DNA of 64,000 nt from the NCBI GenBank assembly GCA_002269645.1, contig NIVC01000111.1:62001-126000 (forward strand). The letters run 5' to 3'. The stretch is from Macrostomum lignano. Lineage: Eukaryota. The position numbers were made by a program, and so were the translations under genes. Shown here one piece after another: positions 746 to 63,150 of this stretch. Under the pieces are notes generated by a model. The model ran no database searches and was not told the DNA's origin. It worked only from the letters and a program-made list of their open reading frames with translations. Position 1 is the first letter of the stretch. Each line of letters begins with the position of its first letter.

Positions 746-1076
746 GACTGACAGCTATTTAGGTTAACAGTTGAGGTTGGCAGTGAAAAGTCGCAGGCCC
801 GCCTCAGTACATGTGCATGCGCAGTACATTTACAGGTTGAGTGTACATTAACGTCAAGCCACACCATCTAAAAGAATATTACTAGATACAAGCTAAGCTG
901 TCGCAAACTGAAATAGATGGTTTTATGGCTGAACAGCTACAGGTACTACTATTATAGAGTAGACAGTTAAGATTGCAGTCAGTAAGCTGATACTTCATGT
1001 ATCTATCTGTATATACAATTTGTAGTTTACTTGCATCCCGCGTGAGCTGCACGCAGATCTGATTGATGACTGTGCA

Positions 1077-8547: not shown

Positions 8548-8570
8548 CCAGATATTGCATTTAATACAGT

Positions 8571-13975: not shown

Positions 13976-19062
<5,087 letters not shown>

Positions 19063-20151: not shown

Positions 20152-21170
<1,019 letters not shown>

Positions 21171-27715: not shown

Positions 27716-28075
27716 GATTCGGTCAGAGGATGCGAAATGGGCTCCGAGAGGGTCAGATAGATGAGGGTACAAAGTGGGTATCTAGAATTTCAGCAGGTGC
27801 AGTTTCACCAGGCAGGCATATGGCAAATTACAGTACTATAAAATAATAATAACACACACAATAATATTATCTAGGAAATGAACAACACTCCGAAAAGCGG
27901 AACCCGTGCACCGGAGTTGAAAACCAGGTCAGCCTTGTCCTCAGCCTGGCATCAGATCTGGGATAAATTATGAAAATTATGAGTCGCAATTATTTTCTAT
28001 CCAATAATTGATTCTCAAAAATTGCTCTCGGCCGGAAGCGAGCCTGTGGGTTCTTTTCTGCAATTTTTGCTATTT

Positions 28076-29388
28076 TAGAGATTTGACAGACTTGGGATAG
28101 AACTGGGGAGATTTTTCAGACTTGGGGTAGAACTGGGGAGATTTGACAGACTTGGGGTAGAACTGGGAAGATTTTACTGAATTGGGGTAGAACTGGGGAG
28201 ATTTGACAGACTTGGGGTAGAACTGGGGAGATTTGACAGACTTGGGGTAGAACTGGGGAGATTTGACAGGCTGGGGTAGAACTGGGAAGATTTTACTGAA
28301 TTGGGGTAGAACTGGGGAGATTTGACAGACTTGGGGTAGAACTGGGGGGATTTGACAGACTTGGGGTAGAACTGGGGAGATTTTACAGACTTGGGATAGA
28401 ACTGGGGAGATTTGACAGACTTGGGGTAGAACTGGGGAGATTTGACAGACTTGGGGTAGAACTGGGGAGATTTGACAGGCTGGGGTAGAACTGGGAAGAT
28501 TTTACTGAATTGGGGTAGAACTGGGGAGATTTGACAGACTTGGGGTAGAACTGGGGGGATTTGACAGACTTGGGGTAGAACTGGGGAGATTTTACAGACT
28601 TGGGATAGAACTGGGGAGATTTGACAGACTTGGGGTAGAACTGGGGAGATTTGACAGACTTGGGGTAGAACTGGGGAGATTTGACAGGCTGGGGTAGAAC
28701 TGGGAAGATTTTACTGAATTGGGGTAGAACTGGGGAGATTTGACAGACTTGGGGTAGAACTGGGGAGATTTGACAGACTTGGGGTAGAACTGGGGAGATT
28801 TGACAGGCTGGGGTAGAACTGGGAAGATTTTACTGAATTGGGGTAGAACTGGGGAGATTTGACAGACTTGGGGTAGAACTGGGAAGATTTTACTGAATTG
28901 GGGTAGAACTGGGAGGATTTGACAGACTTGGGGTAGAACTGGGGGGATTTGACAGACTTGGGGTAGAACTGGGGAGATTTTACAGACTTGGGATAGAACT
29001 GGGGAGATTTGACAGACTTGGGGTAGAACTGGGAAGATTTTACTGAATTGGGGTAGAACTGGGGAGATTTGACAGACTTGGGGTAGAACTGGGGGGATTT
29101 GACAGACTTGGGGTAGAACTGGGGAGATTTGACACACTTTGGGTAGAACTGGAGATTTTTCAGACCTGGGGTAGAACTGGGAAGATTTGACAGACTTGGG
29201 GTAGAACTGGGGAGATTTGACAGACTTGGGGTAGAACTGGGGAGATTTGACAGACTTGGGGTAGAACTGGGGAGATTTGACAGACTTGGGGTAGAACTGG
29301 GGAGATTTGACAGACTTGGGGTAGAACTGGGGAGATTTTACTGAATTGGGGTAGAATTGGGGAGATTTGACAGACTTGGGGTAGAACT
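28076..29388. repeat. 30-bp minisatellite (GACAGACTTGGGGTAGAACTGGGGAGATTT)n
   Basis: Direct reading. Confidence 0.96.
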
Positions 29389-30829: not shown

Positions 30830-31310
30830 TGGGGAATGTGAATAGGGAAGAGTGAGCGGGTGTCTGTGAGTAGGAGGGATTCGTGAACTAATAAATAAGG
30901 GATTGTAAATGGGGATTCGTGAACTAATAAATAAGGGATTGTGAATGGGGATTCGTGAACTAATAAATAAGGGATTGTGAATGGGGATTCGTGAATCAAT
31001 AAATAAGGGATTGTAAATAGGGATTCGTGAATTAATAAATAAGGGATTGTGAATAGGGATTCGTGAATCAATAAATAAGGGATTGTGAATAGGGATTCGT
31101 GAATCAATAAATAAGGGATTGTGAATGGGGATTCGTGAATCAATAAATAAGGGATTGTGAATGGGGTTTCGTGAATCAATAAATAAGGGATTGTGAATGG
31201 GGACTGGTGATTCAATAAATAAGGGATTGTGAATGGAGATTCGTGAATCAATAAATAAGTGATTGTAAATGGGGACTGGTGATTCAATAAATAAGGGATC
31301 GTGAATGGGG
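30830..31310. repeat. 36-bp minisatellite (GTGAATCAATAAATAAGGGATTGTGAATAGGGATTC)n
   Basis: Direct reading. Confidence 0.92.
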
Positions 31311-31596
31311 AGATCCGCGAAGATGGCTATAACAACACTTACCAATGTCAAGTTAGTCGTTGTGCAGAAATGGCCGCACAACTGCAGCAGCAGCAGACCC
31401 CATCGGCGCCCTCTGACTGTCATACATGTACTTTCAATTTGTCGATTTTTATCAATAAAACCCGCTTCGAGTTCACATTTCACAGCTAAACCTCGTTGCA
31501 GACACAATGCACTCGAGTCAGTTGTCATTGTCAATTAAGCACCAACTCTTTGCGCTTTTGTAGCTGTGCTGCTCACAGCTACAAACTTTTCTAGCA

Positions 31597-34500
31597 CCCT
31601 GAAACCCCATCCATCATCCCTGAAACCCCATCCATCATCCCTGAAACCCCATCCATCATCCCTGAAACTCCATCCATCATCCCTGAAACCCTCCCTGAAA
31701 CCCCATCCATCATCCCTGAAACCCTCCCTGAAACCCCATCCATCATCCCTGAAGCCCCATCCATCATCCCTGAAACCCTCCCTGAAACCCCATCCATCAT
31801 CCCTGAAACCCCATCCATCATCCCTGAAGCCCCATCCATCATCCCTGAAACCCCATCCATCACCCCTGAAACCCCATCCATCACCCCTGAAACCCCATCC
31901 ATCATCCCTGAAACCCCATCCATCATCCCTGAAACTCCATCCATCATCCCTGAAACCCCATCCATCACCCCTGAAACCTTATCTATCATCCCTGAAACCC
32001 TCCCTGAAACCCCATCCATCATCCCTGAAACCCTCCCTGAAACCCCATCCATCATCCCTGAAACCCCATCCATCATCCCTGAAACCCTCCCTGAAACCCC
32101 ATCCATCATCCCTGAAACCCCATCCATCATCCCTGAAGCCCCATCCATCATCCCTGAAACCCTCCCTGAAACCCCATCCATCATCCCTGAAACCCCATCC
32201 ATCATCACTGAAACCCCATCCATTATCCTTGAAACGCTCCCTGAAACCCCATCCATCATCCCTGAAACCCCCAACCGATCATCCCTGAAACCCCATCCAT
32301 CATCCCTGAAACCCCCAACCGATCATCCCTGAAACCCCCAACCGATCATCCCTGAAACCCCCAACCGATCATCCCTGAAACCCCCAACCGATCATCCCTG
32401 AAACCCCATCCATCATCCCTGAAATCCCCAACCGATCATCCCTGAAACCCCATCCATCATCCCTGAAACCCCCAACCGATCATCCCTGAAACCCCATCCA
32501 TCATCACTGAAACCCCATCCATTATCCTTGAAACGCTCCCTGAAACCCCATCCATCATCCCTGAAATCCCCAACCGATCATCCCTGAAACCCCCGCACTG
32601 ATCATCCCTGAAACCCCATCCATCATCCCTGAAACCCCCAACCGATCATCCCTGAAACCCCATCCATCATCCCTGAAATCCCCAACCGATCATCCCTGAA
32701 ACCCCATCCATCATCCCTGAAATCCCCAACCGATCATCCCTGAAACCCCATCCATCATCCCTGAAACCCCCAACCGATCATCCCTGAAACCCCATCCATC
32801 ATCACTGAAACCCCCAACCGATCATCCCTGAAACCCCATCCATCATCACTGAAACCCCATCCATTATCCTTGAAACGCTCCCTGAAACCCCATCCATCAT
32901 CCCTGAAATCCCCAACCGATCATCCCTGAAACCCCCCCACTGATCATCCCTGAAACCCCATCCATCATCCCTGAAACCTCATGTATCATCCATGAAATCC
33001 CCAACCGATCATCCCTGAAACCCCCAACCGATCATCCCTGAAACCCCATCCATCATCACTGAAACCCCATCCATTATCCTTGAAACGCTCCCTGAAACCC
33101 CATCCATCATCCCTGAAACCCCCAACCGATCATCCCTGAAACCCCATCCATCATCCCTAAAATCCCCAACCGATCATCCCTGAAACCCCATCCATCATCC
33201 CTGAAATCCCCAACCGATCATCCCTGAAACCCCATCCATCATCCCTGAAACCCCCAACCGATCATCCCTGAAACCCCATCCATCATCACTGAAACCCCCA
33301 ACCGATCATCCCTGAAACCCCATCCATCATCACTGAAATCCCATCCATTATCCTTGAAACGCTCCCTGAAACCCCATCCATCATCCCTGAAATCCCCAAC
33401 CGATCATCCCTGAAACCCCACCACTGATCATCCCTGAAACCCCATCCATCATCCCTGAAACCTCATGTATCATCCATGAAATCCCCAACCGATCATCCCT
33501 GAATCCCCCAACCGATCATCCCTGAAACCCCATCCATCATCCCTGAAATCCCCAACCGATCATCCCTGAAACCCCATCCATCATCCCTGAAATCCCCAAC
33601 CGATCATCCCTGAAACCCCATCCATCATCCCTGAAATCCCCAACCGATCATCCCTGAAACCCCATCCATCATCCCTGAAACCCCCAACCGATCATCCCTG
33701 AAACCCCATCCATCATCACTGAAACCCCCAACCGATCATCCCTGAAACCCCATCCATCATCACTGAAACCCCATCCATTATCCTTGAAACGCTCCCTGAA
33801 ACCCCATCCATCATCCCTGAAATCCCCAACCGATCATCCCTGAAACCCCCCCACTGATCATCCCTGAAACCCCATCCATCATCCCTGAAATCCCCAACCG
33901 ATCATCCCTGAAACCCCATCCATCATCCCTGAAACCCCCAACCGATCATCCCTGAAACCCCATCCATCATCACTGAAACCCCATCCATTATCCTTGAAAC
34001 GCTCCCTGAAACCCCATCCATCATCCCTGAAATCCCCAACCGATCATCCCTGAAACCCCCGCACTGATCATCCCTGAAACCCCATCCATCATCCCTGAAA
34101 CCCCCAACCGATCATCCCTGAAACCCCATCCATCATCCATAAAATCCCCAACCGATCATCCCTGAAACCCCATCCATCATCCCTGAAATCCCCAACCGAT
34201 CATCCCTGAAACCCCATCCATCATCCCTGAAACCCCCAACCGATCATCCCTGAAACCCCATCCATCATCACTGAAACCCCCAACCGATCATCCCTGAAAC
34301 CCCATCCATCATCACTGAAACCCCATCCATTATCCTTGAAACGCTCCCTGAAACCCCATCCATCATCCCTGAAATCCCCAACCGATCATCCCTGAAACCC
34401 CCCACTGATCATCCCTGAAACCCCATCCATCATCCCTGAAACCTCATGTATCATCCATGAAATCCCCAACCGATCATCCCTGAATCCCCCAACCGATCAT

Positions 34501-34933
34501 CCCTGAAACCCCATCCATCATCCCTGAAATCCCCAACCGATCATCCCTGAAACCCCATCCATCATCCCTGAAATCCCCAACCGATCATCCCTGAAACCCC
34601 ATCCATCATCCCTGAAATCCCCAACCGATCATCCCTGAAACCCCATCCATCATCCCTGAAACCCCCAACCGATCATCCCTGAAACCCCATCCATCATCAC
34701 TGAAACCCCCAACCGATCATCCCTGAAACCCCATCCATCATCACTGAAACCCCATCCATTATCCTTGAAACGCTCCCTGAAACCCCATCCATCATCCCTG
34801 AAATCCCTAACCGATCATCCCTGAAACCCCCCCACTGATCATCCCTGAAACCCCATCCATCATCCCTGAAACCCCATCCATCATCCCTGAAACCTCATGT
34901 ATCATCCCTGAAACCCCCAACCCATCATCCCTG
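31597..34933. repeat. 3.3-kb satellite of interleaved 21-bp (CCCTGAAACCCCATCCATCAT) and 23-bp (CCCTGAAACCCCCAACCGATCAT) units
   Basis: Direct reading; recurring variant CCATTATCCTTGAAACGCT. Confidence 0.96.
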
Positions 34934-35399
34934 ACAACTACCTGTCTTGGATTCAGTATTCTTGGCATAAACAGTAATAACCAAAACTCGAACACATTCA
35001 TTATAAAATACACAGTTTCAGCAGTTTAATTTATCTATTTAAAATATTTTAGCATTCGGTCACGTGCAGAATAGCTGATCAATTATTAAAATCAATTATT
35101 TAATTCTTTCTAATGGAGTGGCTCGCAGGTTGTCAAATATTCGACCAGCTCAAGCGACAGTTGCTTAATAGAAACGAAAGCGACTGCTCGATCGATAAGT
35201 GCCTTGTCTGGGCAGGGACGGCGGTGGGAAATGGCTTCGAATTTGAAATGCGACATTTTTGCTAATTGCAGGGAAGTGTAAAGAGTGCTCTCGAGTGCCG
35301 CCTGTACTTGATACCGGTGTTCTAACCTTTAACAAGGGCGAGAGGGACGCAATGGGCAATGTATGGATTTAGTTAGGTATAATGATTTAGCCATATAGG

Positions 35400-35400
<1 letters not shown>

Positions 35401-35476
<76 letters not shown>

Positions 35477-35612
35477 GCACACACACACACAGACAGACAG
35501 ACAGACAGACAGACAGACGCGCACACACACACACACACAGACAGACAGACAGACAGACAGACACAGACAGACGCACACACACACAGACAGACAGACACAC
35601 ACACACACACAC

Positions 35613-35651
<39 letters not shown>

Positions 35652-35696
35652 CAGACAGACGCACACACACACAGACAGACAGACACACACACACAC

Positions 35697-35739
<43 letters not shown>

Positions 35740-35788
35740 CAGACAGACGCACACACACACAGACAGACAGACAGACACACACACACAC

Positions 35789-35835
<47 letters not shown>

Positions 35836-35876
35836 CAGACAGACGCACACACACACAGACAGACAGACAGACACAA
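35401..35876. repeat. (CAGA)n/(CA)n compound microsatellite
   Basis: Direct reading. Confidence 0.97.
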
Positions 35877-36715: not shown

Positions 36716-37145
<430 letters not shown>

Positions 37146-38903: not shown

Positions 38904-41475
38904 ATGGACTGGCTTCGGAGACTCCGGAATCGACTGGGCTCCGCTGGCAGGTCAGTAATTCAGCGAATCTTTGATACTGCTAGCATGGGGAGTCAGCAGC
39001 AACATGCTCAAAGTAATGATGAAGGAATAGAAGATTGCGAGAGCTCAGCAGAGACGGCCGATCTGAGGCCTACGGAGGCGATGAGGCGCAGGTTGATGCT
39101 GAGAAGGCAAAGCGTCAGCGCGGAGAAGCCGGAGCCTGAGGACGGGCGAGAATGGCACGCGGTGAGATCAGATCGAGTTGTTTTCGAATAGCTCCGATTT
39201 TTAGTGGGTGAATCGTGTGCAGTCAAATTTCAGCGCAAACACAAGGTTTTTTTTTAAACTGAGGAATTCACTGTGGGAAAAACATGCTAAACTTGAATGA
39301 CATTGTGTCATGCTGTACGCTCATTATTCCACGCTTAGGAATCATTATTTTAGGCTTCTAAAAATACATTCATGAGACAATGTGTTTGTGTATATGGTTT
39401 TGTCATAGACAAAGATAAATTTTAGTCACTCGTGGCTTCGCTTACCAAGTTGGCAAAGTATCATTGTCATGAGCTTAGAAAGTATACAATGTTGTTGCCC
39501 AACTTCAATCGACTTGAAAAGTTTACAAAGTACATGCTCTGTCTCTACATCCAAGTACTTGGAAAGTGACTCGAGAGAACATTGCATACTAGCTTGAAAG
39601 TGCTTATCGAATGAACTTGAGAAACTCGGAAACTTCATAGGCTTGGCAAGTTTGGGTTGTTTTTTTTCTCAGGCAACTTCTTCTCATCATTGAAGACTGA
39701 ATAGAAAAATCCATTTGTGCCAATTTCGTCAGCGTTACTGTTTGTTGAACTGGGTTTAGGCGCTTTTGCACAGCTGCGGTGTGATAGGATAGTCATTTAG
39801 ATGGAGGGAGAATGAGCAAGAACTAAGACTGCAGAAATAATCCCCCCCTCCAAACAGCCTTTCTTTGCCAAATCAGCTGACGAACTGCGCCAACTGACGG
39901 AATCGCTGCGCAACATCATATTCCTACGGGAGCTGGAGCCGTCCGATCTGCGTCGCATTGCAACAGCGATGCGCGAGCGAACTGTCCAACCCGGTGAGTC
40001 TTTGTTGGGACACGAAAGTCGGACTTTGCTTTTCCTATAAAACTTGAAAAAGTAAGCAGGTACAAAGTACATACGCAGTGAACAACAAGTCAACAACAGC
40101 AATAGAAAGTGTGCTGCTACGCTCGTAAAAGAGTAGAACAACTTTGGAGAAATTTTAGGCCACGCCATCGGCAGAATCGATGAAACGCTGCCGGCCCTCG
40201 CCGGTAAGTTGGTTGGCCGCAGTGTCAGAAGCAGCTGCTACCGCACACTGGTTGTGGGCAGCAAGACACTTAGATGACAACAGCTCTGTGAAATTTTTAT
40301 GTTAAACTTATAGCTTGGCCCTCAGAATGGTTAGCTGTGAAGGAAAGCATCAATCTAAGACTCTATAAGCGTTCATATCGATGTACTCGTTAAGTAGAAT
40401 ACTGATTCCAAGGAAATTCCCAAACTTAAGCAATCATGCTTTTCAAAGTTGCAACAAAGAAACTTCATCCGTATCTTAACTTCTGTTCAACATTACATGA
40501 ACACAAACAGGTCTTCTTTTGAAATAGGCCTTTGAAACCCCAAATTTTTATTGAAATTATTAAAGTATGAATTATTTCATTTATTGCAATCATTACCAAA
40601 TATTTATTGGAATCATCATTCATCGTTACGAGTTTCGTACGCACTTTGAATCTCTGCTTTTTGAATTGTACGAGCTGCAAGTTAAATCTAAAGACACCTT
40701 ACAATTACCCATTGAATAATTAACATGCTTCCTTCCAAACACAGCGGAAACGGTCATACGCGAAGGTGACAACGGCGACAATTTCTATGTGATCCGGCGT
40801 GGTCACTTCGTTGTGACGGCAAAACAAGCTGATGGCACCGCAGAGGTGATCCGCCAGTTGACCGATCAAACGCAGCATGTTGGAGAAGCCGCTCATGCTC
40901 GCAACTACTTCGGCGAGCTCGCGTTGCTCTACAATCGGCCGAGATCGGCCAGCGTGATCGAAGCAGGCGGCGACGGGCAGGGCGGCAGCCTGTGGGTGCT
41001 GGACGGCTCCGCGTTCCGTCGGCTGGTGATTCGGGCCGGGCGTCAGCGCCGACTCGAGCGTCTCCGGATGCTTCGTCGGGTCCCCGCTCTGCGGGATGGA
41101 TTGTCGACCGACGAGTTGGAGCGACTGGCTGACGCGCTGACCTTGCGAGAGTTCTCCCTCGGAGAGGTGGTCTGTTCTAGAGGCGACGAAGCCGATGGAA
41201 TGTACTTTGTGCTTAGTGGAGGCGCCAGGGTAGTTGGCGATGGCGAAGTGAATTTGAGAACGCTCGGGCCTGGAGATTACTTCGGAGAGGCAGCATTGAT
41301 TGACAGAAAGCCTCGCTCTGCCACGGTTGTTGCTGTGACCAGCAGCGATGGCGAAAGCAATGGCGAAGCCGAGGCTATGGCTACGATGGCTTTCCTAGAT
41401 CGGTCAGCTTTTGAACGGCTGCTGGGTCCCTGTGTGGAGCTCATGCGCCGGGGAATGGAAAAGTACACAGACTGA
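38904..41475 (+). CDS. cAMP-dependent protein kinase regulatory subunit-like (RII-type inhibitor site), 374 aa; join(38904..39161,39858..39993,40745..41475)
   Basis: RRQSVSAE inhibitor motif; KSADELRQL hinge; VIREGDNGDNFYVI; two phosphate-binding cassettes (FGELALLYNRPRSASV, FGEAALIDRKPRSATV). Canonical GTGAG donors and CAG acceptors with matching phases (0 and 1). Confidence 0.88.
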
Positions 41476-44129: not shown

Positions 44130-46340
44130 TCAGTTCCCCTGATCAGCTTCCGGGTCGTCTGGCTCCTCTTGGGCACGTTGGTCGGTGGATCGCTTGGCTT
44201 TCATCAGCTCACTGCGCAACCGCCGAAACGCCAACTGCAGTCGCGAAGGAGGGACGTGGGCCTTCACAATTCGTACAAGAAATGATTGTACTACGTCCAG
44301 GGTCCTCTCCGCTACACAATCCCTTGACCGGCCTGTCAACGACTTTGTACGCAAGTCCTCCTCGCTGAAAACAGCACGGAGAAGCGCTCTGAGCACGAGC
44401 ATCTCGGTATGCTCGCTTTTTCGCTCCCCGTGTGTCTCCACCGCGGACATAAGCGTCGAGTAGCTGCGAGCCTTGACCTGTAGTAGAAGGGGTAGAATTT
44501 TGAGCTGCAGAGCGATATTGGACTTTGAAATTGCAATTGCATCCACGAATCCATTTTTGCTACCTTGAACGGGTGCCCCGGCATGAGCGGAACCATTTCG
44601 GCCTCCGGTGCTTCTTCTACATGCTGCTGCACGCTGCTGAATGCAGCGCCAGCTGCTGCTGAAGATGCAGCGGCAGCGGCAACGGGCATTGCAGAGGCGG
44701 CGGCAACGGGAATTAAAGTGGCGGCGGTAACGGCGGTTGCAGCAGCGGATGTGGCAGCGACAGTGGCAACGGCACCTGACGGCGTTTCCTCGGCCATCAG
44801 CTCCGCCATCAGATCGCCTGTCTCGCCAGGTCGCGAGACGCCAGCGCCGTCACTGTGCCACTGTGTCAGCGTTCCGACTGCGGCAGCTTTTATTGCGTCA
44901 GCGAATTGGCAGATGCTACTGAACTGCCGCATCACTCCGTCATTCGTACGGGCACGGTCCTGCTGGGCCTGTGCAAGTGGTGGTATTTGATGATGAGGTG
45001 TGGTTTTAAGAATTGGAACGAGTATGTACTCGTAGTTTCACTTCTAGTGCATCAGAAGGGCCGTGCCTCACCTCTATTAGTGCCGCCTGCATTTTGTCCA
45101 GCTCGCGCTCCATGCTCCCAACCTTGAGGAGCAGCTCCCCATTTTCTCTGGCCAACCGGTCAACCGTCAGATCTCGGGCTGCCAGATCTGTCTGCAGCTG
45201 ACCCACGGTCAGCTGGAGAGCCTGCAGCGAGGCCGCAGTTTCATGCAACTTTGCGTCCCGCACGGCGCACTGCGAGCACGTGTCTGGCACTACAGGAGAA
45301 TGTAAGGGTGGGAGTTTTTTAAACATTCTCTCTCTGGCTTTGGCTTCCCGTTTGTCAGCTGGACCCCAGAATAAAATTGCAGGATACCGACAGCTGTTAG
45401 CGGACGGCTTCCTTGCCCAGAAGACGGAGACTTCATCCCATCTGTGATGCCCGTTAGTTGGTGGTGGGTCACAGAAACAAACAGTGCCATCCATTGCACG
45501 AAAGCTGCCTGCTTCTTTAAACTGTACCACCCACCAGGACGACCCACCTAATGCGACGGCAGACGCAGCGGATGGGGTGGCAGCAGCGCCGGTGGCAGCA
45601 GAGGTCGCGCCGGTGGCAGCGGAGCCGGTGGCAGCAGCGCCGGTGGCAGCAGAGGTCGCGCCGGTGGCAGCGGAGCCGGTGGCAGCAGCGCCGGTGGCAG
45701 CAGAGGTCGCGCCGGTGGCAGCGCAGCCGGTGGCAGCAGAGGTCGTGCCGGTGGCAGCAGCGCCGGTGGCAGCAGAGGTCGCGCCGGTGGCAGCGGAGCC
45801 GGTGGCAGCAGAGGTCGCGCCGGTGGCAGCGGAGCCGGTGGCAGCAGAGGTCGCGCCGGTGGCAGCGGAGCCGGTGGCAGCAGCGCCGGTGGCAGCAGAG
45901 GTCGCGCCGGTGGCAGCGCAGCCGGTGGCAGCAGAGGTCGTGCCGGTGGCAGCAGCGCCGGTGGCAGCAGAGGTCGCGCCGGTGGCAGCGGAGCCGGTGG
46001 CAGCAGCGCCGGTGGCAGCAGAGGTCGCGCCGGTGGCAGCGGAGCCGGTGGCAGCAGAGGTCGCGCCGGTGGCAGCGGAGCCGGTGGCAGCAGAGGTCGT
46101 GCCGGTGGCAGCGGAGGCAGTTGGCAGTCGCTTCGGCCGATGCGACCGGCCATCGGTTCGGTTGTGCACCGTGGCTGAGCAGCGGCCGCACAAAAACATT
46201 GAAGTCAGTGGGCATTTGGAGCACCGCACCTCCGCCAGGCTGGTACATGAAGCACAGCTCCTAGCGTCTTGAGCAGCTCGCGTCGGGAGGCTGCCCGACT
46301 TATCGGCTGTGCGGCGGCGAGTCTGGCGACCGGATGACAT
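44130..46340 (-). CDS. CACTA accessory gene: B-box-type zinc finger - Ala/Thr/Gly repeat - coiled coil - BEN-like domain, ~673 aa; complement(join(44130..44477,44564..44968,45072..46340))
   Basis: CASC..CSKC..LCGRCSATVH..H; two phase-0 GT-AG introns join three ORF segments; C-terminal LRALLRAVFSEEDLRTKSLTG fits the BEN consensus. Confidence 0.72.
45575..46115. repeat. In-frame coding minisatellite of 15- and 21-bp units (CCGGTGGCAGC core)
   Basis: Encodes ATGSA/ATGAA/ATGATSA; all unit lengths are multiples of 3. Confidence 0.9.
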
Positions 46341-51612: not shown

Positions 51613-51794
51613 ATTAAAAAGCACCTCAAGTGCTGGCAGTTGCCAAACTGGCTAACTGTAGGTATAAAACATTTTGGAGCAAACAGCTCATTTCTAAGTT
51701 TGCATTAAAAAGCACCTCAAGTGCTGGCAGTTGCCAAACTGGCTAACTGTAGGTATAAAACATTTTGGAGCAAACAGCTCATTTCTAAGTTTGC
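51613..51794. repeat. 91-bp tandem duplication (2 copies)
   Basis: ATTAAAAAGCACCTC...TAAGTTTGC begins at 51613 and again at 51704. Confidence 0.92.
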
Positions 51795-53133
51795 GTTTAG
51801 TTTCTCTTGACATAAAAATTCTTCTTACATCACACTGAAATTCAAACGGTACTACACTCTTCACCTCCGTGTAATATACATGTTCACCTACAGTCTACAA
51901 GTACATTTTAAAACGCACCAGAAAATCACAACAGATCAGACACCTAAAATAATTGCTAACGGAATGACAATGTATTTGGGAAGCAAATAGAAGTTATTAA
52001 TCTTCTCTGCAACACGCTTCCTGCACCGTACAAACCGTAGTCCAGTTAATTGAATGTAGGCGTCGGCATTCGACCAGTGACAGTTGGAACAGACCCCGCC
52101 GCTGAACAATAGCTGCAAAAGTGAGCAAAAAGGCTTTTTAGAAAGCAATATACACTCCGTTTTAGCCTACTGAACTCTAATTGCACTAACTAGCCTACTG
52201 AGTTAGTAGAAAGTTTAGCGCTAGTACAACGATTCTTAGACGATTTTTTCGCGACTCTTTTACGCTTCTACAACTCACGTGACGCGCTTGTGATGCAAGA
52301 GTCACTTCTCCGTCGCATTTGACGCGTTTGAGTCGTTAAAAAGTCACAAGAGTCGCCCCAGACGCGCTAGAGTCACTAGAGAGTTGTTTGCAACGACTTT
52401 TTAGCGACTCTTGTCACGGTATCGTTTTCAACGGGAGAGCTACTGATTCCACGTAGTTTGATAAAAGCCCCATCTACACTCAACTGTGTAAAAGACTACC
52501 AAGTATATTTTAATGAATTTTGGGAGGGATAGTTCTGTCCGATTTGGTATAGTACGGGCTGAGGGCGTTTTATTGAGTTGGAATTGTCTCAGAGCAGCCC
52601 CTTTGGCCCCTTTTTGAATTAACTGTTGAGTTTTGTAGCTGTTCTGCTTCGTGCATCTTATAATTTGCGTCATACAAACTGTGCAGTTCGAAATACAAGC
52701 ATTAAATTCGAAAAAAAAACTACGAGCGTACTTCAATCCTGTTGCGTGCTGCTAACAACATTTTTCGATAGCAGCTTTTTTTTCAAACCAGCTAGAACGA
52801 GTTAAATATTAGAAGCAGTAAAAGTTTTTAGTGTCGTTCTATCTGAATGAAGTTTGCTATATAGTTTGAGTTGTGCACTCGGAGAGCTAAGCAGCGATAT
52901 TCTCAATCGCCACTTTCGCTCTGTACTCATCAGCTTGTCACGAAAAGAGCATTAGAATCTTGTTACAGCTACAGCTATTAAACTTAATGATGTATTTCCG
53001 GTTGCAAGTCGCTGAGCGTGTATTAAAAACAAGCATTGAAACCCTGTGCAATGGCCAGATAAAAGTTTCCAGTGTAATTCCTATTATTTAAACACTCAGG
53101 AACTATAGCTCTGCAAAGTGAAGACTTACAGCC

Positions 53134-56100
53134 ATGCAGCGTATTAGCTTCTCATTCGCTATGGCAACCGTAATCCTGCTAATGGCCTGTTGCTATGGCA
53201 TCGCCATGGCGGCTAGAAACAATCGGAATTGCGACAACATTAGTGAGTATAGTGCTTCGATGTATTTTCTCATTGAAACTTCACAATATAGAACTGTGGA
53301 TAGATGTTCACTATGGCTTTTAAGACCCGAAAAATAACTGGGACTAAACTAGATCCAAGGAAGATACCGCGTGGTATCAGGACGTAGCATTTTTAAAAAT
53401 GCTACAAAATTATTAGAAGGCCCGCTAGTTGGCATTGCAGCTAAACTTTAAATAATCTTAACTCTGGATCTGTTGCACTTAAAATGAGTTTTTTGCCAGG
53501 TTTTTTTTAACTATTGTAGATATAGGGCAATATTAAATGTAATGTGACGAAGTTAGATCGATTGTGAACGATGTCGATGCAGCGTGACGCGCTGAGCGCA
53601 TGCTGAGAGTTTATTTAATATATTAACAATGAAAATAATCTTAACATTCTTAACATTAAAGATAGCAACGAGCGTAGCGTATTAATTGCTAGCGTATAGC
53701 GTAGCAATGAGACGGTGTGAAGGAAGGAGATCGAGAGGGAGCAAGCGCGCGTAAAATAGATTCGAATACATTTTATATACTGCTAGGTATTTCTATGAAT
53801 TATACGGTATAACAAAAAATGCGTTAACGCTAAATAAGAAAGTAAAATTTAAATATAATGTAGAAATAGATTATGAATATTATGCTGTATGATACAAAAT
53901 AAGAAAGAAAGGTAAAATAAAGAAAGTGACAGCTCACACTTACATTACGCTATGAAAATTTTTTTGTCACATTGTATTTTTTTCATGCGCCGGTGAAGAA
54001 AGTTAATAAATACCGTGCACCCGCATTCAAAATATTTCGCTTTTTGCCCGGCCTGTTAGGCTTTCTGTTCTCCCGGGTCTTAATTTATCCGGGGGACACC
54101 GCAAAGCAAAATTATTGTCACTTTGCGATAACCTACCCAGGATAATCCAAGGCGCAACAAAATCGGGCTTTAAAATATCCTGGGTTTTAAATTGTCCGAG
54201 GTGAATAAAGATTGGTGGTCAAGTTATTTACCTGATAAAACGCATGTAAATGGGGCAGGACATCATTTCGAGAGAATGGGGCTGACTCAGAGGCCAGGGA
54301 ATACCTGCACCTTAGAGAGGGGAGGGGCAGATGAGGTGCAGTCTAAAAATAAATCGATAATGGACTGGCGTCACATTGCTAGCACTACCAGCGTACGTGC
54401 AATGGAGATCAGTGTACGAGCTAATAGCCCACAAAGGAAAGTGTTGCGCAAATTACAAGTATATTACACGTAACTTTTAAGATATATAGAGTTTATTTCT
54501 TGTCGAAGTTCTACGTTTAGGAAAATTTATCTCTCGATGGCTAAAGTATCGCTGAACCAAGTGTTTTTTATGTTTTGAACGAGTATGTTGAGCTGCCGGA
54601 AAATTCCAGTACGAAAGAGAGAGATAATGTAAAACGAAAAATCAGAGAAAAGAGCAAAAACTTCACGCTTCATTCAGCGGATGGCCTATTTTTGATTGAT
54701 CGAATTACATGTAGATTGGTGAATCAAGTAACAGTTTTTCGGCTGACAATGTATAGTATCAATAGCTTTAATTTTGCTTCTGTTTGGAGTGTGTGAAATG
54801 CAAAATAGTGATTGAAAATACACTCGGTTAAATAAGCATGACGCAGATGTTTGCCAGTTGAAAAAGTAGCAAAAAGTTTTTTTTTACTTTGCTATTCCTA
54901 ACCCCGGATATCAGTAGCCGGAAGTCCTAAAGCAAACCTCTGTCTCCGCAGACTGACCCCTCTCTTTCAACCTACAGTCGGATGTCCGAAGACAACTTCC
55001 CCTTCTTGTGATCTCCGGGCCGGATAGCAGAGTCAGTGCCGTAGGATGTCCGGGAGAGACATCTCAAAGTGCCCAGACAATGCAAAGCAGCTCAAGATAT
55101 CCGGGTAAGAGAAAACAAAGCAGGCTTTTTGCTTGGCAGTATCCGGGCGGATATCGTAAGTGCGTTCGGATATCCGGGCCAGACAAAAAACCCCGGAAAG
55201 TCTAAAGTGTAACACCGGCCCCCGCTCGTGCTCGCTCGGCGGATCGATCGGCCCATTACAAGTAGCATTCAGAATACTGAGCCGATTGAACCTTAGTGGG
55301 GTGTTCGTATATTTAATTGTAAGATTGAGTTGAAGTGTGAACCGATATTTCCGTTGATAAGGGCGCAGGAGGCCCGCGACTATTCTGTAATTTCATGGCT
55401 AACTTTGGAAGGAATAATTAAGACTAGCTCTGTAACTTTTGTGCACTTAAGTATTAATATTTTAATTGCGCCGATCTAAATCTGTAATTACATATAATAA
55501 TAAGCAATTTTTAGTAGATAAATGTAATAGTTAACTTTTCCAACCTTCAATTCATATATACTTGATTAAGTGCCCTTCTCAGTCAATTTATTTAAAGCTT
55601 TGATTGTTGCCAGCGAAACTATATATGTACCTTTCCGACAATTTTATTTGGGAGACAAGTATTGGGGAGGAATCGCAATTTAAGATATCAAAGAGTACAC
55701 ATTTTGGCATCTATTCAAACCATCTCAGGGTAACGTCCGATCGACTGGTGGAAACAGTAGTAGCCTTGGGCCATTATGTTGTATCGCTAACACAGGGATA
55801 AGTTAATTGGGATAATTGTCACCGTCAGGGTTGTCTATAAATTCAGAAATTTTAAGAGGTCTGAGACGTTTAGCCGATATAACAGTAATTTGTATCAAAA
55901 CCTTAGTCATCGCTAGCTATGAGTTCGGATACTCCTTGCCCTTTGTGAGGTAACAGACAGTGAGTCATCGTGAACCATGGCAAGACATTTTGCCGTATTA
56001 GTTAAAGTTTGAGTGAAAACAAATTGCCTTTTTATTATCGGGGTTTGTTTGAATGATAAGTGAATTGTGGGACCGAATTAATTTGAATTCATTTCTTAGA

Positions 56101-57221
56101 AACTCTGGAGTTAGTGCAGGGATCGTTATACTCACTGCAGTAGGAATAGACGCCTTTTACATTTGGTAACAATGGTGGGATTTGAAATTCCTATTCTCCT
56201 ACCGAGTTAGAAACAATTGTACAATTGTTCTCTTTTGGATGACGTAATTAGCTAGTTCAGCCTTATATCTACATGTAGGAATGACAGGGGATGTACAGTA
56301 AGTAACTGCTATACGCAATATTTCTGGCAGTCGAAAAGAAATAAATAAGCTGCGATGAATTTCGAATATGGTTTCCGTTGAACTAGCTACCGTTTTCTTG
56401 ACAAAGTAGCAAACCAGAAAAGCATACATGCAGTTTGGAAGCTTTAAAAATTGTAATCTGTTCAGTGCTGAATAGGCTGCAAAAAGCTATATAGTCTGCA
56501 CAAAATCAGCGGGGCAATATTTCCGAAATCTTGGCACACCGGTGCAACACATAGACTCCCAATATTTAAAGTATTTATTTTGCTGTTCAAACGAGCTACA
56601 ATACCACTGCTTTATATTTTGTATTTAAACTCGCCTCAGAACCTCTATATTATCATTAAAAAACTTGTGAAATAGGAAAAGTATGCCCAATACAACGGTG
56701 AATTCGTTTAGTGAACCTTGACTAGATCATAGCTAACTTGCCTTGTTTTAACTCGTTTTTTTACTAATTTATTGGCAGGAGCCGATGATGAAAATGGAGA
56801 GAGCGTCATCTGCGGCAGGGTGACATTCGTGAACGATGGTGACACGCTGCGCCTCTCTCCGGACGGCCGCAGAAATTCGGCGTCTCTGCGCATCCGCCTG
56901 CTAGAGATTGACGCGCCGGAACTGAACCAACGGCACGGCGCTGAGGCGCGCGACGCCCTGCGATACATGGCACCAACCGGCTCGCGCGTCTGCATCTTAG
57001 TAGACAACGAGGACATCTACGGCAGACTGCTGGGCCGAGTCTGCCGCGGCGGCGCCGACTTAAATCTGCGCCTGTTGGAGGATGGGCACGTCTGGTGCTA
57101 TCGGGGCCGCTGTCGCTCGGCCTACAGGACGGCAGAATTGCAGGCGCGTTCTAGTAGGCGCGGACTTTGGTCGGATCCGACAGCGCAGGCACCCTGGCTG
57201 TTCAGAAAGCAGAAAGGATAG
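53134..57221 (+). CDS. Secreted single-domain staphylococcal-nuclease (thermonuclease) homologue, 183 aa; join(53134..53242,56779..57221)
   Basis: Exon 1 is signal-peptide-like and ends at a phase-1 GTGAGT donor. TACTAAT branch and CAG acceptor at 56776-56778 are also phase 1. Exon 2 has DGDT, RIRLLEIDAPE, DIYGRLLG, LNLRLLEDG, AE..AR..RRGLWS..PW.FRK. Confidence 0.82.
55208..56186 (+). mobile_element. LTR-like sequence (TGT...ACA, ~954 bp) followed by a tRNA-Leu-like primer-binding site (56164-56186)
   Basis: The PBS reverse complement TTCAAAT-CCCAC-CATTGTTA-CCA has tRNA 3'-end geometry. Collinear blocks are shared with 58870-59575. Confidence 0.55.
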
Positions 57222-58049
57222 GCTGGCAAGCATTACGCTGGTGCCTGCGCCTGCCCTGCCTGACCACACCAGACGCTGGTGTGGTCAAACTAATACGATG
57301 TACTATTCAGAGTAAGATAGTCAAAGAAGAACAATGAGAACGGACTGACTGCAAAGCTGCCGGAATTAAAAGCTTCTTTATATTGCAAACTAATTAAAAG
57401 CACTGAATTAATACATAGTTATGGAAGATAACACCGGATCTATAAAGTTTGCTGGCGCAATTTTACTATTAAAAATTATCCACCTCTTCACGTTACCTAA
57501 AAAACGCACAAGAATTTAATGATATACGATTAGACTAGATGCTACTATTAGAATACCCATAAGAAATAACACCAATTTTTTGTTCCTGCAAGCTTAATAC
57601 GAGCTAAAATAAGGAGTCCTCATGCCACCATCCCCAGTTCTGAGCTAACCGTCCCGCGTCCGAGTAAGAAGATAACAGAGTCAGGTAGGAAACCGCGCAC
57701 CTGTTAATATAGAGTTTAGAAGGTTTTCCAACGACCGGCTGGGACTTTTCGCCCAACTGGGCATCAATTTAATTTAAGGTGGTGTGACCGATACGTAGGG
57801 GCACGATACAAGCGTAGCAAAAAAACAAAAAACGTTCAAAATCGGCAATCAAATTAAAACACGATTAGATTGAAAATGATACCATGCAAAAAGAGTGTAA
57901 ATTTTTTTTTTCAATTGCAGGAGCATTGTCAACAGAGAGAGCTTGAGAATAATTACAGTGGAACGCTCTGTAGCCTGAGCTAAACACGCAACTGAGAACA
58001 GAAATATTAATTCTCTAGAAATACATTTTACGAGTACAAAGGGGCGCTT

Positions 58050-61609: not shown

Positions 61610-63150
61610 CAAAAGTCTCTGACCAGCTCGAAACAATTGACGTTGTAGTCCGATCCGTGACACTGTAAATTCCTGATGCAACGGTGAGACGATGTTCAAG
61701 GATGATATGCACAACTACACTACAACGATATTTTAACCAGGTCTGAAACAGTTGACGTTGTCGTCGGATCCGTAACATAGCGAATTCCTGATGCAACGGT
61801 GAAATGCTGTTTAAGGCTGATATGCAGGACTACACTTCAGAGAAAGATATTGTAACCAGATCAGAATTAATTTAAGTTGTCGGATCCGTGACAATGCAGA
61901 TTCCTAGTGCAACGGTGAGATTTTCAAGGCTGATTTGCAGGACTACACTCCATGCAGAGAAAGATATTGTAACCAGATCTGAAACAGTTGACGTTGATGC
62001 AGTGGTCAGATCCGTGACAGGGCATATTCCTAATGCAACGGTGAGATGTTCGATCAAGACTGATACACAGGACTATATTCCAGAGAAGAATGTTGTAACT
62101 AGATCTGAAACAGTTGACGTTGTGGTCGGATCCGTGACATTGCAAATTTCTGATGCAACAGTGAGACGATGTTCAAGGATGATATGCACAACTACACTAC
62201 AACGATATTTTAACCAGGTCTGAAACAGTTGACGTTGTCGTCGGATCCGTAACATAGCGAATTCCTGATGCAACGGTGAAATGCTGTTTAAGGCTGATAT
62301 GCAGGACTACACTTCAGAGAAAGATATTGTAACCAGATCAGAATTAATTTAAGTTGTCGGATCCGTGACAATGCAGATTCCTAGTGCAACGGTGAGATTT
62401 TCAAGGCTGATTTGCAGGACTACACTCCATGCAGAGAAAGATATTGTAACCAGATCTGAAACAGTTGACGTTGATGCAGTGGTCAGATCCGTGACAGGGC
62501 ATATTCCTAATGCAACGGTAAGATGTTCGATCAAGACTGATACACAGGACTATATTCCAGAGAAGGATGTCGTAACTAGATCTGAAACAGTTGACGTTGT
62601 GGTCGGATCCGTGACATTGCAAATTTCTGATGCAACGGTGAGACGATGTTCAAGGATGATATGCACAACTACACTACAACGATATTTTAACCAGGTCTGA
62701 AACAGTTGACGTTGTCGTCGGATCCGTAACATAGCGAATTCCTGATGCAACGGTGAAATGCTGTTTAAGGCTGATATGCAGGACTACACTTCAGAGAAAG
62801 ATATTGTAACCAGATCAGAATTAATTTAAGTTGTCGGATCCGTGACAATGCAGATTCCTAGTGCAACGGTGAGATTTTCAAGGCTGATTTGCAGGACTAC
62901 ACTCCATGCAGAGAAAGATATTGTAACCAGATCTGAAACAGTTGACGTTGATGCAGTGGTCAGATCCGTGACAGGGCATATTCCTAATGCAACGGTGAGA
63001 TGTTCGATCAAGACTGATACACAGGACTATATTCCAGAGAAGGATGTTGTAACTAGATCTGAAACAGTTGACGTTGTGGTCGGATCCGTGACATTGCAAA
63101 TTTCTGATGCAATGGTGAGATGTTCAAGGGTGATATGCAGGACTAGACTC
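61610..63150. repeat. 477-bp tandem repeat (~3.2 copies), each made of four diverged ~119-bp monomers
   Basis: Near-identical ORFs recur at 61888, 62365 and 62842; GAAACAGTTGACGTTG..GATCCGTGACA recurs every ~115-126 bp. Confidence 0.93.

What the first reader, a model, noticed from the sequence alone, without database searches (positions are those of the whole stretch)
53134..57221. Intron-containing, secreted, bacterial-type micrococcal nuclease in an animal genome
Seen: an orphan 36-codon signal-peptide-like exon (MQRISFSFAMATVILLMACCYGIAMAA) splices in phase across a 3.5-kb intron to a compact SNase domain. All classical catalytic/Ca2+ residues are present (equivalents of S. aureus D21, R35, D40, E43, R87). 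Known: animals typically carry this fold in the multi-domain cytoplasmic Tudor-SN. Stand-alone active SNases are typical of bacteria, with some in fungi and plants. Inference: a horizontally acquired, domesticated extracellular Ca-dependent nuclease, possibly for mucus, gut or antimicrobial use or for degrading extracellular DNA.
Basis: partly seen in the sequence, partly recalled or inferred. Interest (0 to 1): 0.85.

Follow-up and report, generated by a model that had tools for sequence, protein, structure and literature searches.

The report
Bacterial-type secreted nuclease gene in flatworm
The flatworm Macrostomum lignano carries a real, spliced gene for a small secreted DNA/RNA-cutting enzyme of a type otherwise found mainly in bacteria. 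It belongs to a small flatworm gene family that most likely came from one old gene transfer from a bacterium or phage.

Summary
Exon 1 (53134-53242), a 3,536-bp phase-1 GT..AG intron and exon 2 (56779-57221) encode a 183-aa protein. It is identical to GenBank PAA90379.1 of Macrostomum lignano, whose annotation was built only from RNA-seq.

The protein has a signal-peptide-like N-terminus followed by one staphylococcal-nuclease (SNase) domain:
- Pfam E = 1.3e-14.
- AlphaFold pLDDT 91.5, TM about 0.78 to S. aureus nuclease.
- All Ca2+-binding and catalytic residues are present.

It is not contamination. Three 98.7-99.6% identical copies lie on 120-700 kb contigs with the same intron, next to LINEs and animal genes, and dN/dS is about 0.1.

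M. lignano has at least two more SNase subfamilies at 41-43% identity. They share the two-exon plan, the same phase-1 intron position and five family-specific cysteines. The acquisition, signal exon and intron are therefore older than the family's divergence.

Apart from these paralogues, every relative whose source or genomic context I could check was bacterial or phage-like (40-50% identity). No other eukaryote appeared among the named hits.

Horizontal transfer is well supported but not proven. Secretion, enzyme activity and biological role are inferred. The result is a new member of a known kind and of moderate interest.

The parts
53134..53242 (+). Exon 1: start codon, signal-peptide-like segment and linker (aa 1-36 plus the first base of Arg37)
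   Evidence: The exon is identical to the first exon of GenBank PAA90379.1. It differs by one synonymous base in the two other genomic copies.
53134..53211 (+). Predicted signal peptide, aa 1-26. The n-region is MQR, the h-region is ISFSFAMATVILLMACCYGI, and the c-region is AMA followed by A27.
   Evidence: The hydropathy scan gives a 9-residue mean up to 2.7 over residues 6-20. Small residues sit at -3 and -1. SignalP was not available, so cleavage versus a signal anchor is undecided.
53243..56778 (+). Phase-1 spliceosomal intron, 3,536 nt, GTGAGT...CAG, 38% GC
   Evidence: The same splice sites occur in both other copies, and the intron is 97.7-99.1% identical between copies. It has no Pfam-matching ORFs, no Rfam or tRNA hits and no repeat shared with the rest of the window.
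56779..57221 (+). Exon 2: the rest of the linker plus the whole SNase domain, with the TAG stop at 57219-57221
56799..57218 (+). SNase (staphylococcal/micrococcal nuclease) OB-fold domain, aa 44-183
   Evidence: Pfam PF00565, E = 1.3e-14. The domain envelope is 44-183. The AlphaFold model has pLDDT 91.5. Foldseek gives TM 0.77-0.79 to S. aureus nuclease Delta+PHS structures.
56835..56846 (+). D56-G57-D58-T59 motif. D58 corresponds to S. aureus D21, a Ca2+ ligand.
   Evidence: The motif is invariant in the 18- and 120-sequence alignments. The codons were read.
56895..56921 (+). R76 (= R35) through I80-D81-A82-P83-E84. D81 corresponds to D40, a Ca2+ ligand, and E84 to E43, the general base.
   Evidence: The codons were read.
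57018..57026 (+). Y117-G118-R119, corresponding to S. aureus Y85-G86-R87. R87 stabilises the phosphate and transition state.
57365..57398 (+). Two ATTAAA hexamers, at 57365 and 57393, 144-172 nt after the stop. They are candidate poly(A) signals.
   Evidence: Pattern scan only. This is weak evidence.

Best explanation
This is a functional Macrostomum lignano gene for a small extracytoplasmic, Ca2+-dependent, sugar-non-specific nuclease of the staphylococcal (micrococcal) nuclease family.

Proposed mechanism:
- Exon 1 supplies a eukaryotic ER signal sequence.
- Exon 2 supplies one SNase OB-fold domain.
- D58 and D81, together with the backbone at position 82, would bind Ca2+.
- E84 would activate water.
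- R76 and R119 would hold the scissile phosphate.
- DNA and RNA would be cut to 3'-phosphorylated products, as in S. aureus nuclease A.

Proposed history: the domain derives from a bacterial or phage thermonuclease (YncB-like) gene taken up by an ancestor of M. lignano. It then gained a signal-peptide exon, a phase-1 intron and a set of conserved cysteines that are likely disulfides. Finally it duplicated into at least three diverged subfamilies.

Shown here: the gene structure, family membership, intact active-site residues, host integration, purifying selection, the paralogue family and the prokaryotic character of the checked relatives.

Inferred: secretion, enzymatic activity, the direction and timing of transfer, and the biological role. 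My best guess for the role is digestion or clearance of extracellular nucleic acid from prey diatoms, microbes or biofilm.
For: - Gene model and transcription. The protein is identical to PAA90379.1. The Mlig_3_7 annotation was built only from RNA-seq, using StringTie and TACO, with no ab initio prediction (PMC5730564).
- Fold and active site. Pfam SNase 55 bits. S. aureus nuclease E about 2e-9. AlphaFold pLDDT 91.5 and pTM 0.80. Foldseek TM 0.77-0.79. D56, G57, D58, T59, R76, D81, P83, E84, Y117 and R119 are conserved.
- Host integration. Three copies sit on contigs of 353, 701 and 120 kb with identical splice sites. Exons are 98.7-99.6% identical and the intron 97.7-99.1%. Neighbours include two LINEs, a Mab-21-like ORF and cNMP-binding and ankyrin exons. 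GC3 of 0.69 lies inside the range of other ORFs in the window, 0.55-0.82.
- Selection. Across the three copies there are 5 synonymous and 2 non-synonymous differences, giving pN/pS of 0.08-0.13.
- Family. Paralogues P0124 and P0126 are 41-43% identical. They have the same two-exon plan, with a phase-1 intron exactly four codons after a linker Cys and a GTGAGT donor. Five cysteines are invariant in the family (C48, C108, C125, C143, C148). Cys is rare (0-4%) among 419 non-flatworm domains at the four of these positions that could be scored. The flatworm sequences are monophyletic in neighbour-joining trees, with 75% Scoredist bootstrap support.
- Prokaryotic ancestry. The other best hits are 40-50% identical thermonucleases. 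The ones checked lie on gene-dense proteobacterial contigs or a phage-like contig. Named hits are Neisseria, Methylomonas, Pusillimonas and Pseudoduganella. The flatworm proteins share the bacterial C-terminal GLWSDP...PWxFR motif and the short loop after E84, neither of which S. aureus nuclease has.
Against: - No enzymatic, localisation or expression data were available. The gene identifiers were absent from three supplementary data sets.
- The hydrophobic N-terminal stretch is about 20 residues, which is long for a cleaved signal peptide. It could instead be a signal anchor, giving a membrane-tethered ectonuclease. SignalP could not be run.
- Monophyly of the flatworm family has only 18% bootstrap support with Kimura distances. 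It was not recovered in a cruder 427-sequence tree.
- No fungal (LCL3), plant (CAN) or Tudor-SN sequences were in the trees. Most of the 150 best representatives carry no taxon label. Transcriptomes of other Macrostomum species and other flatworms could not be searched. Vertical descent with massive loss is therefore not formally excluded.
Confidence: 0.78

Rival explanations
1. Bacterial contamination or a chimeric assembly: exon 2 is a piece of bacterial DNA wrongly joined into a flatworm contig, and the 'intron' is an artefact.
For: Exon 2 is 62% GC, set in about 40% GC surroundings. Its closest non-flatworm relatives are bacterial.
Against: - Three independent loci on 120-700 kb contigs carry the same exon-intron-exon arrangement, with 96-99% identical flanks.
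- The exon-2 frame has no usable start codon of its own.
- The best bacterial identity is only about 50%, so it is not a recent contaminant.
- Other host ORFs in the window are equally GC-rich.
- Diverged paralogues share the intron position.
- The annotated model comes from RNA-seq.
Confidence: 0.01
2. Vertical inheritance: an ancient eukaryotic stand-alone SNase, like fungal LCL3 or plant CAN, was retained in Macrostomum and lost from most other animals. On this view there was no horizontal transfer.
For: - Stand-alone SNase proteins do exist in plants (PMC3505149) and, from my own knowledge, in fungi.
- The flatworm family is old enough to have diverged to 41-43% identity and has fully eukaryotic gene architecture.
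- Eukaryotic SNases were not included in my trees.
- Other flatworm transcriptomes could not be searched.
Against: - In an exhaustive HMMER scan of 1.84 billion representatives, the checked top hits other than M. lignano paralogues are bacterial or phage.
- In two name-bearing searches, no eukaryote other than M. lignano appears in the best 120.
- Identity to bacterial proteins is 40-50%, and the bacterial-type C-terminal PWxFR motif is shared.
- The homology to bacterial proteins starts right at the intron, which fits a captured domain fused to a host-derived leader.
Confidence: 0.12
3. The gene is genuine but the protein is not a secreted nuclease. Either it is a membrane-anchored (type II) ectonuclease, or it is a nucleic-acid-binding protein that has lost catalysis, as the SN domains of Tudor-SN largely have.
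For: - The hydrophobic segment is about 20 residues with a 3-residue n-region, and AlphaFold models one long helix over residues 6-30.
- From my own knowledge, S. aureus Nuc2 is a signal-anchored SNase, so there is a precedent.
- No activity data exist.
Against: - All catalytic and Ca2+-binding residues are retained in all three subfamilies. That would be unexpected for a mere binding module.
- The paralogues have shorter, typical signal-peptide h-regions of 10-16 residues.
- An AXA motif sits at the predicted cleavage site.
- Conserved cysteines suit an oxidising, extracellular environment.
Confidence: 0.09

Closest known systems
Bacterial thermonuclease / YncB-like SNase family proteins (for example the 'thermonuclease family protein' of Neisseria leonii, Methylomonas koyamae and Pusillimonas, and metagenomic 'endonuclease YncB')
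   Same: - A single SNase domain of about 135 residues behind an N-terminal export signal.
- 40-50% identity.
- The same DGDT / R / IDAPE / YGR catalytic constellation.
- The same short loop after the catalytic Glu.
- The same C-terminal GLWSDP...PWxFR motif.
   Different: - The flatworm gene has a spliceosomal phase-1 intron between leader and domain.
- It has a eukaryotic-type leader.
- It has five family-specific cysteines. Cys is rare (0-4%) in the non-flatworm domains at the four positions that could be scored.
- It sits in animal chromatin next to LINEs.
Staphylococcus aureus nuclease A (micrococcal nuclease, Nuc)
   Same: The fold matches at TM 0.77-0.79. The Ca2+ ligands and catalytic residues D21, R35, D40, E43 and R87 are all conserved. 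It is also a secreted enzyme.
   Different: Identity is only about 24-27%. The flatworm protein lacks the loop at residues 44-49, so it resembles the engineered Delta+PHS deletion. It has the extra PWxFR tail and cysteines. It falls below the NCBIfam NucI cut-off, at 19 bits against 250.
Plant CAN1/CAN2 staphylococcal-like Ca2+-dependent nucleases
   Same: They are eukaryotic, have a single SNase domain and are Ca2+-dependent DNase/RNases. They are thought to be of bacterial origin (PMC3505149).
   Different: The CANs are tethered to the plasma membrane by N-myristoylation and palmitoylation, and they carry extra motifs. The flatworm protein starts MQRISF, so it has no Gly2, and it has a hydrophobic signal sequence instead. 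No sequence comparison with the CANs was made here.
Tudor-SN / SND1, the usual animal carrier of the SNase fold
   Same: It contains SNase-like OB-fold domains.
   Different: From established knowledge and PMC3505149, Tudor-SN is a large cytoplasmic protein with four or five tandem SN domains plus a Tudor domain. The flatworm protein is 183 aa with one SN domain, a leader peptide and the full catalytic set.
Phage-encoded SNase (P0138 on the phage-like contig L021)
   Same: It is the closest single non-flatworm sequence, at 50% identity. It shares the GHAWxYRGxC stretch and groups as sister in the Scoredist tree.
   Different: It is 129 aa with no leader. It lies among DNA polymerase A, helicase, NrdG-like and AAA ATPase genes that all run on one strand. 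The sister relationship has weak support.

Membership tests
SNase / staphylococcal nuclease homologue (Pfam PF00565) | The sequence matches the family HMM above the curated gathering score. | tested here: met
   55 bits against a cut-off of 21, E = 1.3e-14, covering profile positions 1-107 of 107.
SNase / staphylococcal nuclease homologue (Pfam PF00565) | OB-fold beta-barrel plus three helices, as in S. aureus nuclease. | tested here: met
   The AlphaFold2 model has pLDDT 91.5 and pTM 0.80. The top 50 Foldseek PDB hits are all S. aureus nuclease, with TM 0.75-0.79 normalised to the target and probability 1.00.
SNase / staphylococcal nuclease homologue (Pfam PF00565) | Ca2+ ligands: D21, D40 and the T41 backbone. 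| tested here: met
   D58 and D81 are present. Position 82 is Ala, as in nearly all bacterial relatives, and the ligand there is a backbone carbonyl.
SNase / staphylococcal nuclease homologue (Pfam PF00565) | Catalytic residues: E43 as general base, and R35 and R87 as phosphate clamps. | tested here: met
   E84, R76 and R119 are present. They are invariant or at least 90% conserved in 120 homologues and invariant in the flatworm paralogues.
SNase / staphylococcal nuclease homologue (Pfam PF00565) | Ca2+-dependent hydrolysis of DNA and RNA to 3'-phosphate products. | not testable with these tools
   This needs a recombinant enzyme assay.
Secreted protein (classical ER signal peptide) | An N-terminal n/h/c region with small residues at -3 and -1. 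| tested here: inconclusive
   The sequence is MQR + a 20-residue hydrophobic core + AMA|A. The features fit, but the h-region is long, no SignalP run was possible, and a signal anchor is not excluded.
Horizontally acquired gene of prokaryotic origin in an animal | Physically integrated in host chromosomes: introns, host neighbours and several loci. | tested here: met
Horizontally acquired gene of prokaryotic origin in an animal | The closest relatives outside the species are prokaryotic or phage, and the gene is nested among them. | tested here: met
   Outside M. lignano, the checked best hits in exhaustive and indexed searches are on bacterial or phage contigs or carry bacterial names. Most hits are unlabelled metagenome sequences, and tree support is moderate.
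Horizontally acquired gene of prokaryotic origin in an animal | Absent from related animals (patchy distribution). | tested here: inconclusive
   No other eukaryote appears among the named hits. Unannotated Macrostomum and other flatworm genomes and transcriptomes are not in the protein collections searched.
Horizontally acquired gene of prokaryotic origin in an animal | Expressed and under selection. | tested here: met
   pN/pS is 0.08-0.13, with 5 synonymous and 2 non-synonymous differences. The deposited model comes from an annotation built only from RNA-seq. Reads were not inspected directly.
Tudor-SN (SND1) | Four or five tandem SN domains plus a Tudor domain, about 900 aa, cytoplasmic. 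| tested here: not met
   The protein is 183 aa with a single SNase hit, no Tudor domain and an N-terminal hydrophobic leader.
Plant CAN-type membrane SNases | An N-terminal myristoylation/palmitoylation motif (Met-Gly...Cys). | tested here: not met
   The N-terminus is MQRISF, with no Gly2. The CAN features are taken from PMC3505149.
NCBIfam equivalogs EcnA (NF047969) and NucI (NF047694) | A score above the curated equivalog cut-off. | tested here: not met
   36 bits against 180, and 19 bits against 250.

The most novel reading that the evidence does not exclude
An ancestor of Macrostomum captured a bacterial or phage thermonuclease and fused it to a host signal-peptide exon. The gene then expanded into a disulfide-stabilised family of secreted nucleases that gives the worm an extracellular DNA/RNA-degrading capacity. 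Possible uses are digesting prey (diatom) and microbial nucleic acids in the gut, dissolving eDNA-based biofilms on its epidermis or adhesive pads, or acting in seminal fluid. This would be a lineage-specific physiological innovation by horizontal transfer in a flatworm model where transgenesis is established.
Probability: 0.3. Interest if true: 0.65.

Novelty: new member of a known kind. Interest (0 to 1): 0.5.

Why it matters
The SNase fold is normally known in animals only from the multi-domain cytoplasmic protein Tudor-SN. Here a compact, bacterial-type SNase that looks catalytically complete and has a secretion leader is fixed in a flatworm genome. It has an intron, conserved cysteines and at least three diverged paralogue groups.

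This is a clean, checkable example of prokaryote-to-animal gene transfer followed by domestication: a leader exon, an intron, likely disulfides and duplication. M. lignano has transgenesis and an annotated genome (PMC5730564), so the predictions can be tested directly.

It does not open a new class of biology. Horizontal transfer of single secreted enzymes into invertebrates is a known phenomenon, and the enzyme family is among the best studied of all.

Tried and rejected
The single-protein scans found only 32-43% identical hits across several bacterial phyla in GTDB species genomes and 37-40% hits in IMG/VR. No specific donor could be named.
- First tree. A 427-domain neighbour-joining tree on an automatic alignment did not recover flatworm monophyly. 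A better alignment of 117 sequences did, with method-dependent support.
- Literature. I found no paper on horizontal transfer in Macrostomum involving this gene, on SNases in animals, or naming the gene identifiers.
- Expression. The gene identifiers are absent from the supplementary tables of three M. lignano transcriptomic papers.
- NCBIfam. Only sub-threshold matches to EcnA and NucI.
- Other features in the region. The intron and the antisense strand of exon 2 hold no Pfam-matching ORF. The window has no Rfam family or tRNA. The intron is not a repeat found elsewhere in the window or in the paralogue loci.
- Rejected explanations. I rejected contamination, a pseudogene and a Tudor-SN fragment.
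Full report
**Observation.**
- An ATG at 53134 opens a 109-nt exon that ends at 53242, before a consensus donor (TTA|GTGAGT).
- A 3,536-nt AT-rich intron (38% GC) ends in TTGGCAG| at 56778.
- Exon 2 runs from 56779 to the TAG at 57219-57221.
- The junction is phase 1 (A + GA = Arg37), and the 552-nt CDS encodes 183 residues.
- The exon-2 frame is closed just upstream of 56772. Its first in-frame Met (M99) lies downstream of the catalytic residues, so exon 2 cannot be expressed as an active protein without an upstream exon.

**Identity of the window and of the gene.** The spliced protein is 100% identical over its full length to GenBank PAA90379.1, 'hypothetical protein BOX15_Mlig018861g1'. UniRef names it 'TNase-like domain-containing protein'. 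It comes from the free-living flatworm Macrostomum lignano, on a 353,632-bp contig. The Mlig_3_7 annotation was generated only from RNA-seq, using STAR mapping, StringTie and TACO, with boundaries set from trans-splicing and poly(A) reads (PMC5730564). I could not inspect reads myself.

**What the protein is.**
- Pfam assigns residues 74-169 to SNase (PF00565): 55 bits against a cut-off of 21, E = 1.3e-14.
- The best PDB sequence matches are S. aureus thermonuclease variants, E about 2e-9.
- An AlphaFold2 model built on 120 homologues is confident (pLDDT 91.5, pTM 0.80).
- All of its 50 best Foldseek matches in the PDB are S. aureus nuclease, with TM 0.75-0.79 normalised to the target.
- Aligned with S. 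aureus nuclease A and bacterial relatives, every functional position is kept: D56-G57-D58-T59 (D58 = D21), R76 (= R35), D81 (= D40), P83-E84 (E84 = E43) and Y117-G118-R119 (= Y85-G86-R87).
- Like its bacterial relatives and unlike S. aureus Nuc, it lacks the loop after E43 and ends in GLWSDP...PWxFR.

The N-terminus has one positive charge (MQR), a 20-residue hydrophobic core and AMA|A at -3/-1. This fits a signal peptide. The core is long enough that an uncleaved signal anchor cannot be excluded.

**Not contamination, not a pseudogene.**
- Two further copies (PAA87530.1 and PAA64899.1) lie on contigs of 701,524 and 119,612 bp.
- All three copies have the same donor and acceptor. Exons are 98.7-99.6% identical and introns 97.7-99.1%. 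About 0.7 kb upstream and 6.8 kb downstream are also collinear. This matches the known redundancy of this assembly of a hidden polyploid.
- The seven exon differences are five synonymous and two conservative replacements (V110I and R163H). pN/pS is 0.08-0.13, and pS (0.03-0.04) is close to the intron divergence. By my own binomial estimate, five or more of seven changes being synonymous has P of about 0.01 under neutrality.
- The window also holds two full-length non-LTR retrotransposons (endonuclease, RT and RNase H), a Mab-21-like ORF, cNMP-binding and ankyrin exons, and many micro- and minisatellites.
- Exon 2 is GC-rich (62%, GC3 0.71). Other host ORFs in the window are similar, with GC3 of 0.55-0.82.

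**A gene family, not an orphan.** An exhaustive HMMER scan of 1.84 billion representative proteins found 16,128 relatives at E of 1e-3 or better. After the query itself, three of the four best hits are other M. lignano proteins:
- P0124, from the Mlig008456 / Mlig013652 group, at 43% identity.
- P0126, P0278, P0127 and P0279, from the Mlig022653 group, at 41-43% identity.

All are about 200 aa with hydrophobic leaders. All retain the catalytic residues and share five invariant cysteines (C48, C108, C125, C143, C148) plus one in the linker. Four of these five positions could be scored in the 427-domain alignment. There, only 0-4% of the 419 non-flatworm domains have Cys.

Exact two-exon reconstruction of the paralogue loci shows the same architecture. 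Exon 1 carries the leader plus a linker Cys. A phase-1 intron follows exactly four codons after that Cys, with a GTGAGT donor. One exon carries the whole domain. Intron lengths are 734, 3,319 and 3,522-3,536 nt.

The shared intron position and cysteine signature argue that the leader exon, the intron and the cysteines were in place before the subfamilies diverged. In neighbour-joining trees of 117 domains, the flatworm sequences form one clade. Bootstrap support is 75% with Scoredist distances and 18% with Kimura distances. The B+C subfamilies get 84-95%. A cruder 427-sequence tree did not recover the clade.

**Where it came from.** Apart from the paralogues, every hit that I could place is prokaryotic or viral.
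- P0049 lies between LysR, TctC, Rieske oxygenase and ABC-transporter genes.
- P0309 lies among SurA, MCP and RsmJ genes.
- P0301 lies next to the Isc cluster.
- Named hits are Neisseria, Methylomonas, Pusillimonas and Pseudoduganella thermonucleases.
- The two- to four-domain proteins that score highly are labelled 'endonuclease YncB' in metagenomes or carry lipoprotein-type leaders.
- The single closest sequence, P0138 (50% identity, 129 aa, no leader), sits on a one-strand, ORFan-rich contig with DNA polymerase A, a helicase, an NrdG-like protein and an AAA ATPase. This looks like a phage.

A profile of the flatworm family searched against 5.8 billion proteins, including nr and UniRef, returned no other eukaryote in the best 120. 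The score drops from 300 bits or more (flatworm) to 132 bits or fewer for single-domain bacterial proteins.

Similarity to bacterial proteins begins right after the intron. This is what one expects if a prokaryotic domain was captured and given a host-type leader.

Horizontal acquisition from a bacterium or phage is therefore the best-supported history. It has three limits:
- Most hits are unlabelled.
- No fungal, plant or Tudor-SN sequences were in the trees.
- Genomes and transcriptomes of other Macrostomum species and other flatworms were not searchable here.

**Mechanism proposed.**
- Shown: the gene structure, the fold, the active-site residues, integration in the host genome, purifying selection and the family.
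- Inferred: co-translational entry into the ER via exon 1; cleavage near A26/A27, or retention as a type II anchor; disulfide stabilisation through the conserved cysteines; and Ca2+-dependent endo-/exonucleolytic cleavage of DNA and RNA outside the cell by the classical SNase mechanism.
- Unknown: the tissue and the purpose. Digestion of nucleic acids from diatom prey and microbes, or clearance of extracellular DNA, seem most plausible to me.

**Comparison with known systems.** The protein works like, and passes the sequence and structure tests for, the SNase family. Within that family it is closest to bacterial YncB-like thermonucleases. It does not belong to three related groups:
- It is not Tudor-SN, because it has a single domain, a leader and no Tudor domain.
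- It lacks the lipidation motif that defines plant CAN nucleases.
- It is below threshold for the NCBIfam equivalogs EcnA and NucI.

**Novelty.** The sequence is already in GenBank and UniProt with an automatic name. I found no paper that describes it, its family or its probable horizontal origin, and no expression data. I rate it a new member of a known kind. It is a solid and testable case of a domesticated prokaryotic enzyme in a model flatworm, and of moderate interest.

Noticed in passing
L018/L019 6001-7337, L020 6001-9967 (M. lignano contigs NIVC01004013.1, NIVC01000568.1, NIVC01000025.1): There are at least two further M. lignano SNase subfamilies, 41-43% identical to the window gene. 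They have the same leader exon, phase-1 intron and domain exon, and the same cysteines. An older gene prediction (UniRef A0A1I8GL13, 1,918 aa) fuses one of them to a GPCR-like gene.
   Followed up: yes
L021 1-12246 (Logan SRR26065815 contig), SNase gene at 8001-8390: The closest single non-flatworm relative (P0138, 50% identity, no leader) is on a phage-like contig. All genes run on one strand and include DNA polymerase A, a helicase, an NrdG-like radical-SAM protein, an AAA ATPase and many ORFans. This hints that the donor could have been a phage rather than a bacterium.
   Followed up: partly
window 6970-12310 (+) and 13976-18912 (-): Two apparently full-length non-LTR retrotransposons lie in opposite orientation. 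Their ORF2s are 1,139 and 1,272 aa with endonuclease, RT and RNase H domains, and each has an upstream ORF1-like ORF. They flank a 384-aa ORF with a Mab-21 C-terminal domain (12724-13878, minus strand).
   Followed up: partly
window 1-760, 3398-4228, 20152-21168, 21685-22495, 26647-27716, 28078-29388, 30876-31311, 31597-34934, 35403-35873, 36718-37144: The first 38 kb has a very high density of micro- and minisatellites, with periods of 4, 12, 14, 17, 21/44, 30 and 36 bp. One is a 3.3-kb array of a 21/44-bp unit with extreme strand skew (GC skew about -0.73). These arrays create many long spurious ORFs.
   Followed up: no
window 61630-63139: A 477-bp unit is repeated 3.2 times at 98% identity. 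It is itself built from roughly 115-bp subrepeats. The region is conserved in the two other copies of the locus.
   Followed up: no
window 40789-41475 (+): An exon-like ORF encodes two cyclic-nucleotide-binding domains (Pfam cNMP_binding, E = 3e-26). It is probably part of a larger multi-exon host gene that was not reconstructed.
   Followed up: no
window 53124-53133: The sequence ACTTACAG|CC lies immediately before the ATG, so an AG sits 2 nt upstream of the start codon. About 39% of M. lignano genes are SL trans-spliced (PMC5730564), so this could be a trans-splice acceptor. This was not tested.
   Followed up: no
window 52436-53133 versus L001/L002: Collinearity between the three copies of the locus stops about 700 bp upstream of the ATG, while 6.8 kb downstream is conserved. 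The upstream region of the window copy therefore differs by an insertion, deletion or rearrangement, which could affect its promoter.
   Followed up: no
window 51613-51794: A perfect (100%) tandem duplication of a 91-bp unit.
   Followed up: no
window 45006-46340 (-): A 444-aa ORF has a Cys-rich, zinc-finger-like N-terminus and a long (SAATGATSAATG)n repeat encoded by a 36/123-bp minisatellite. It has no Pfam match.
   Followed up: no
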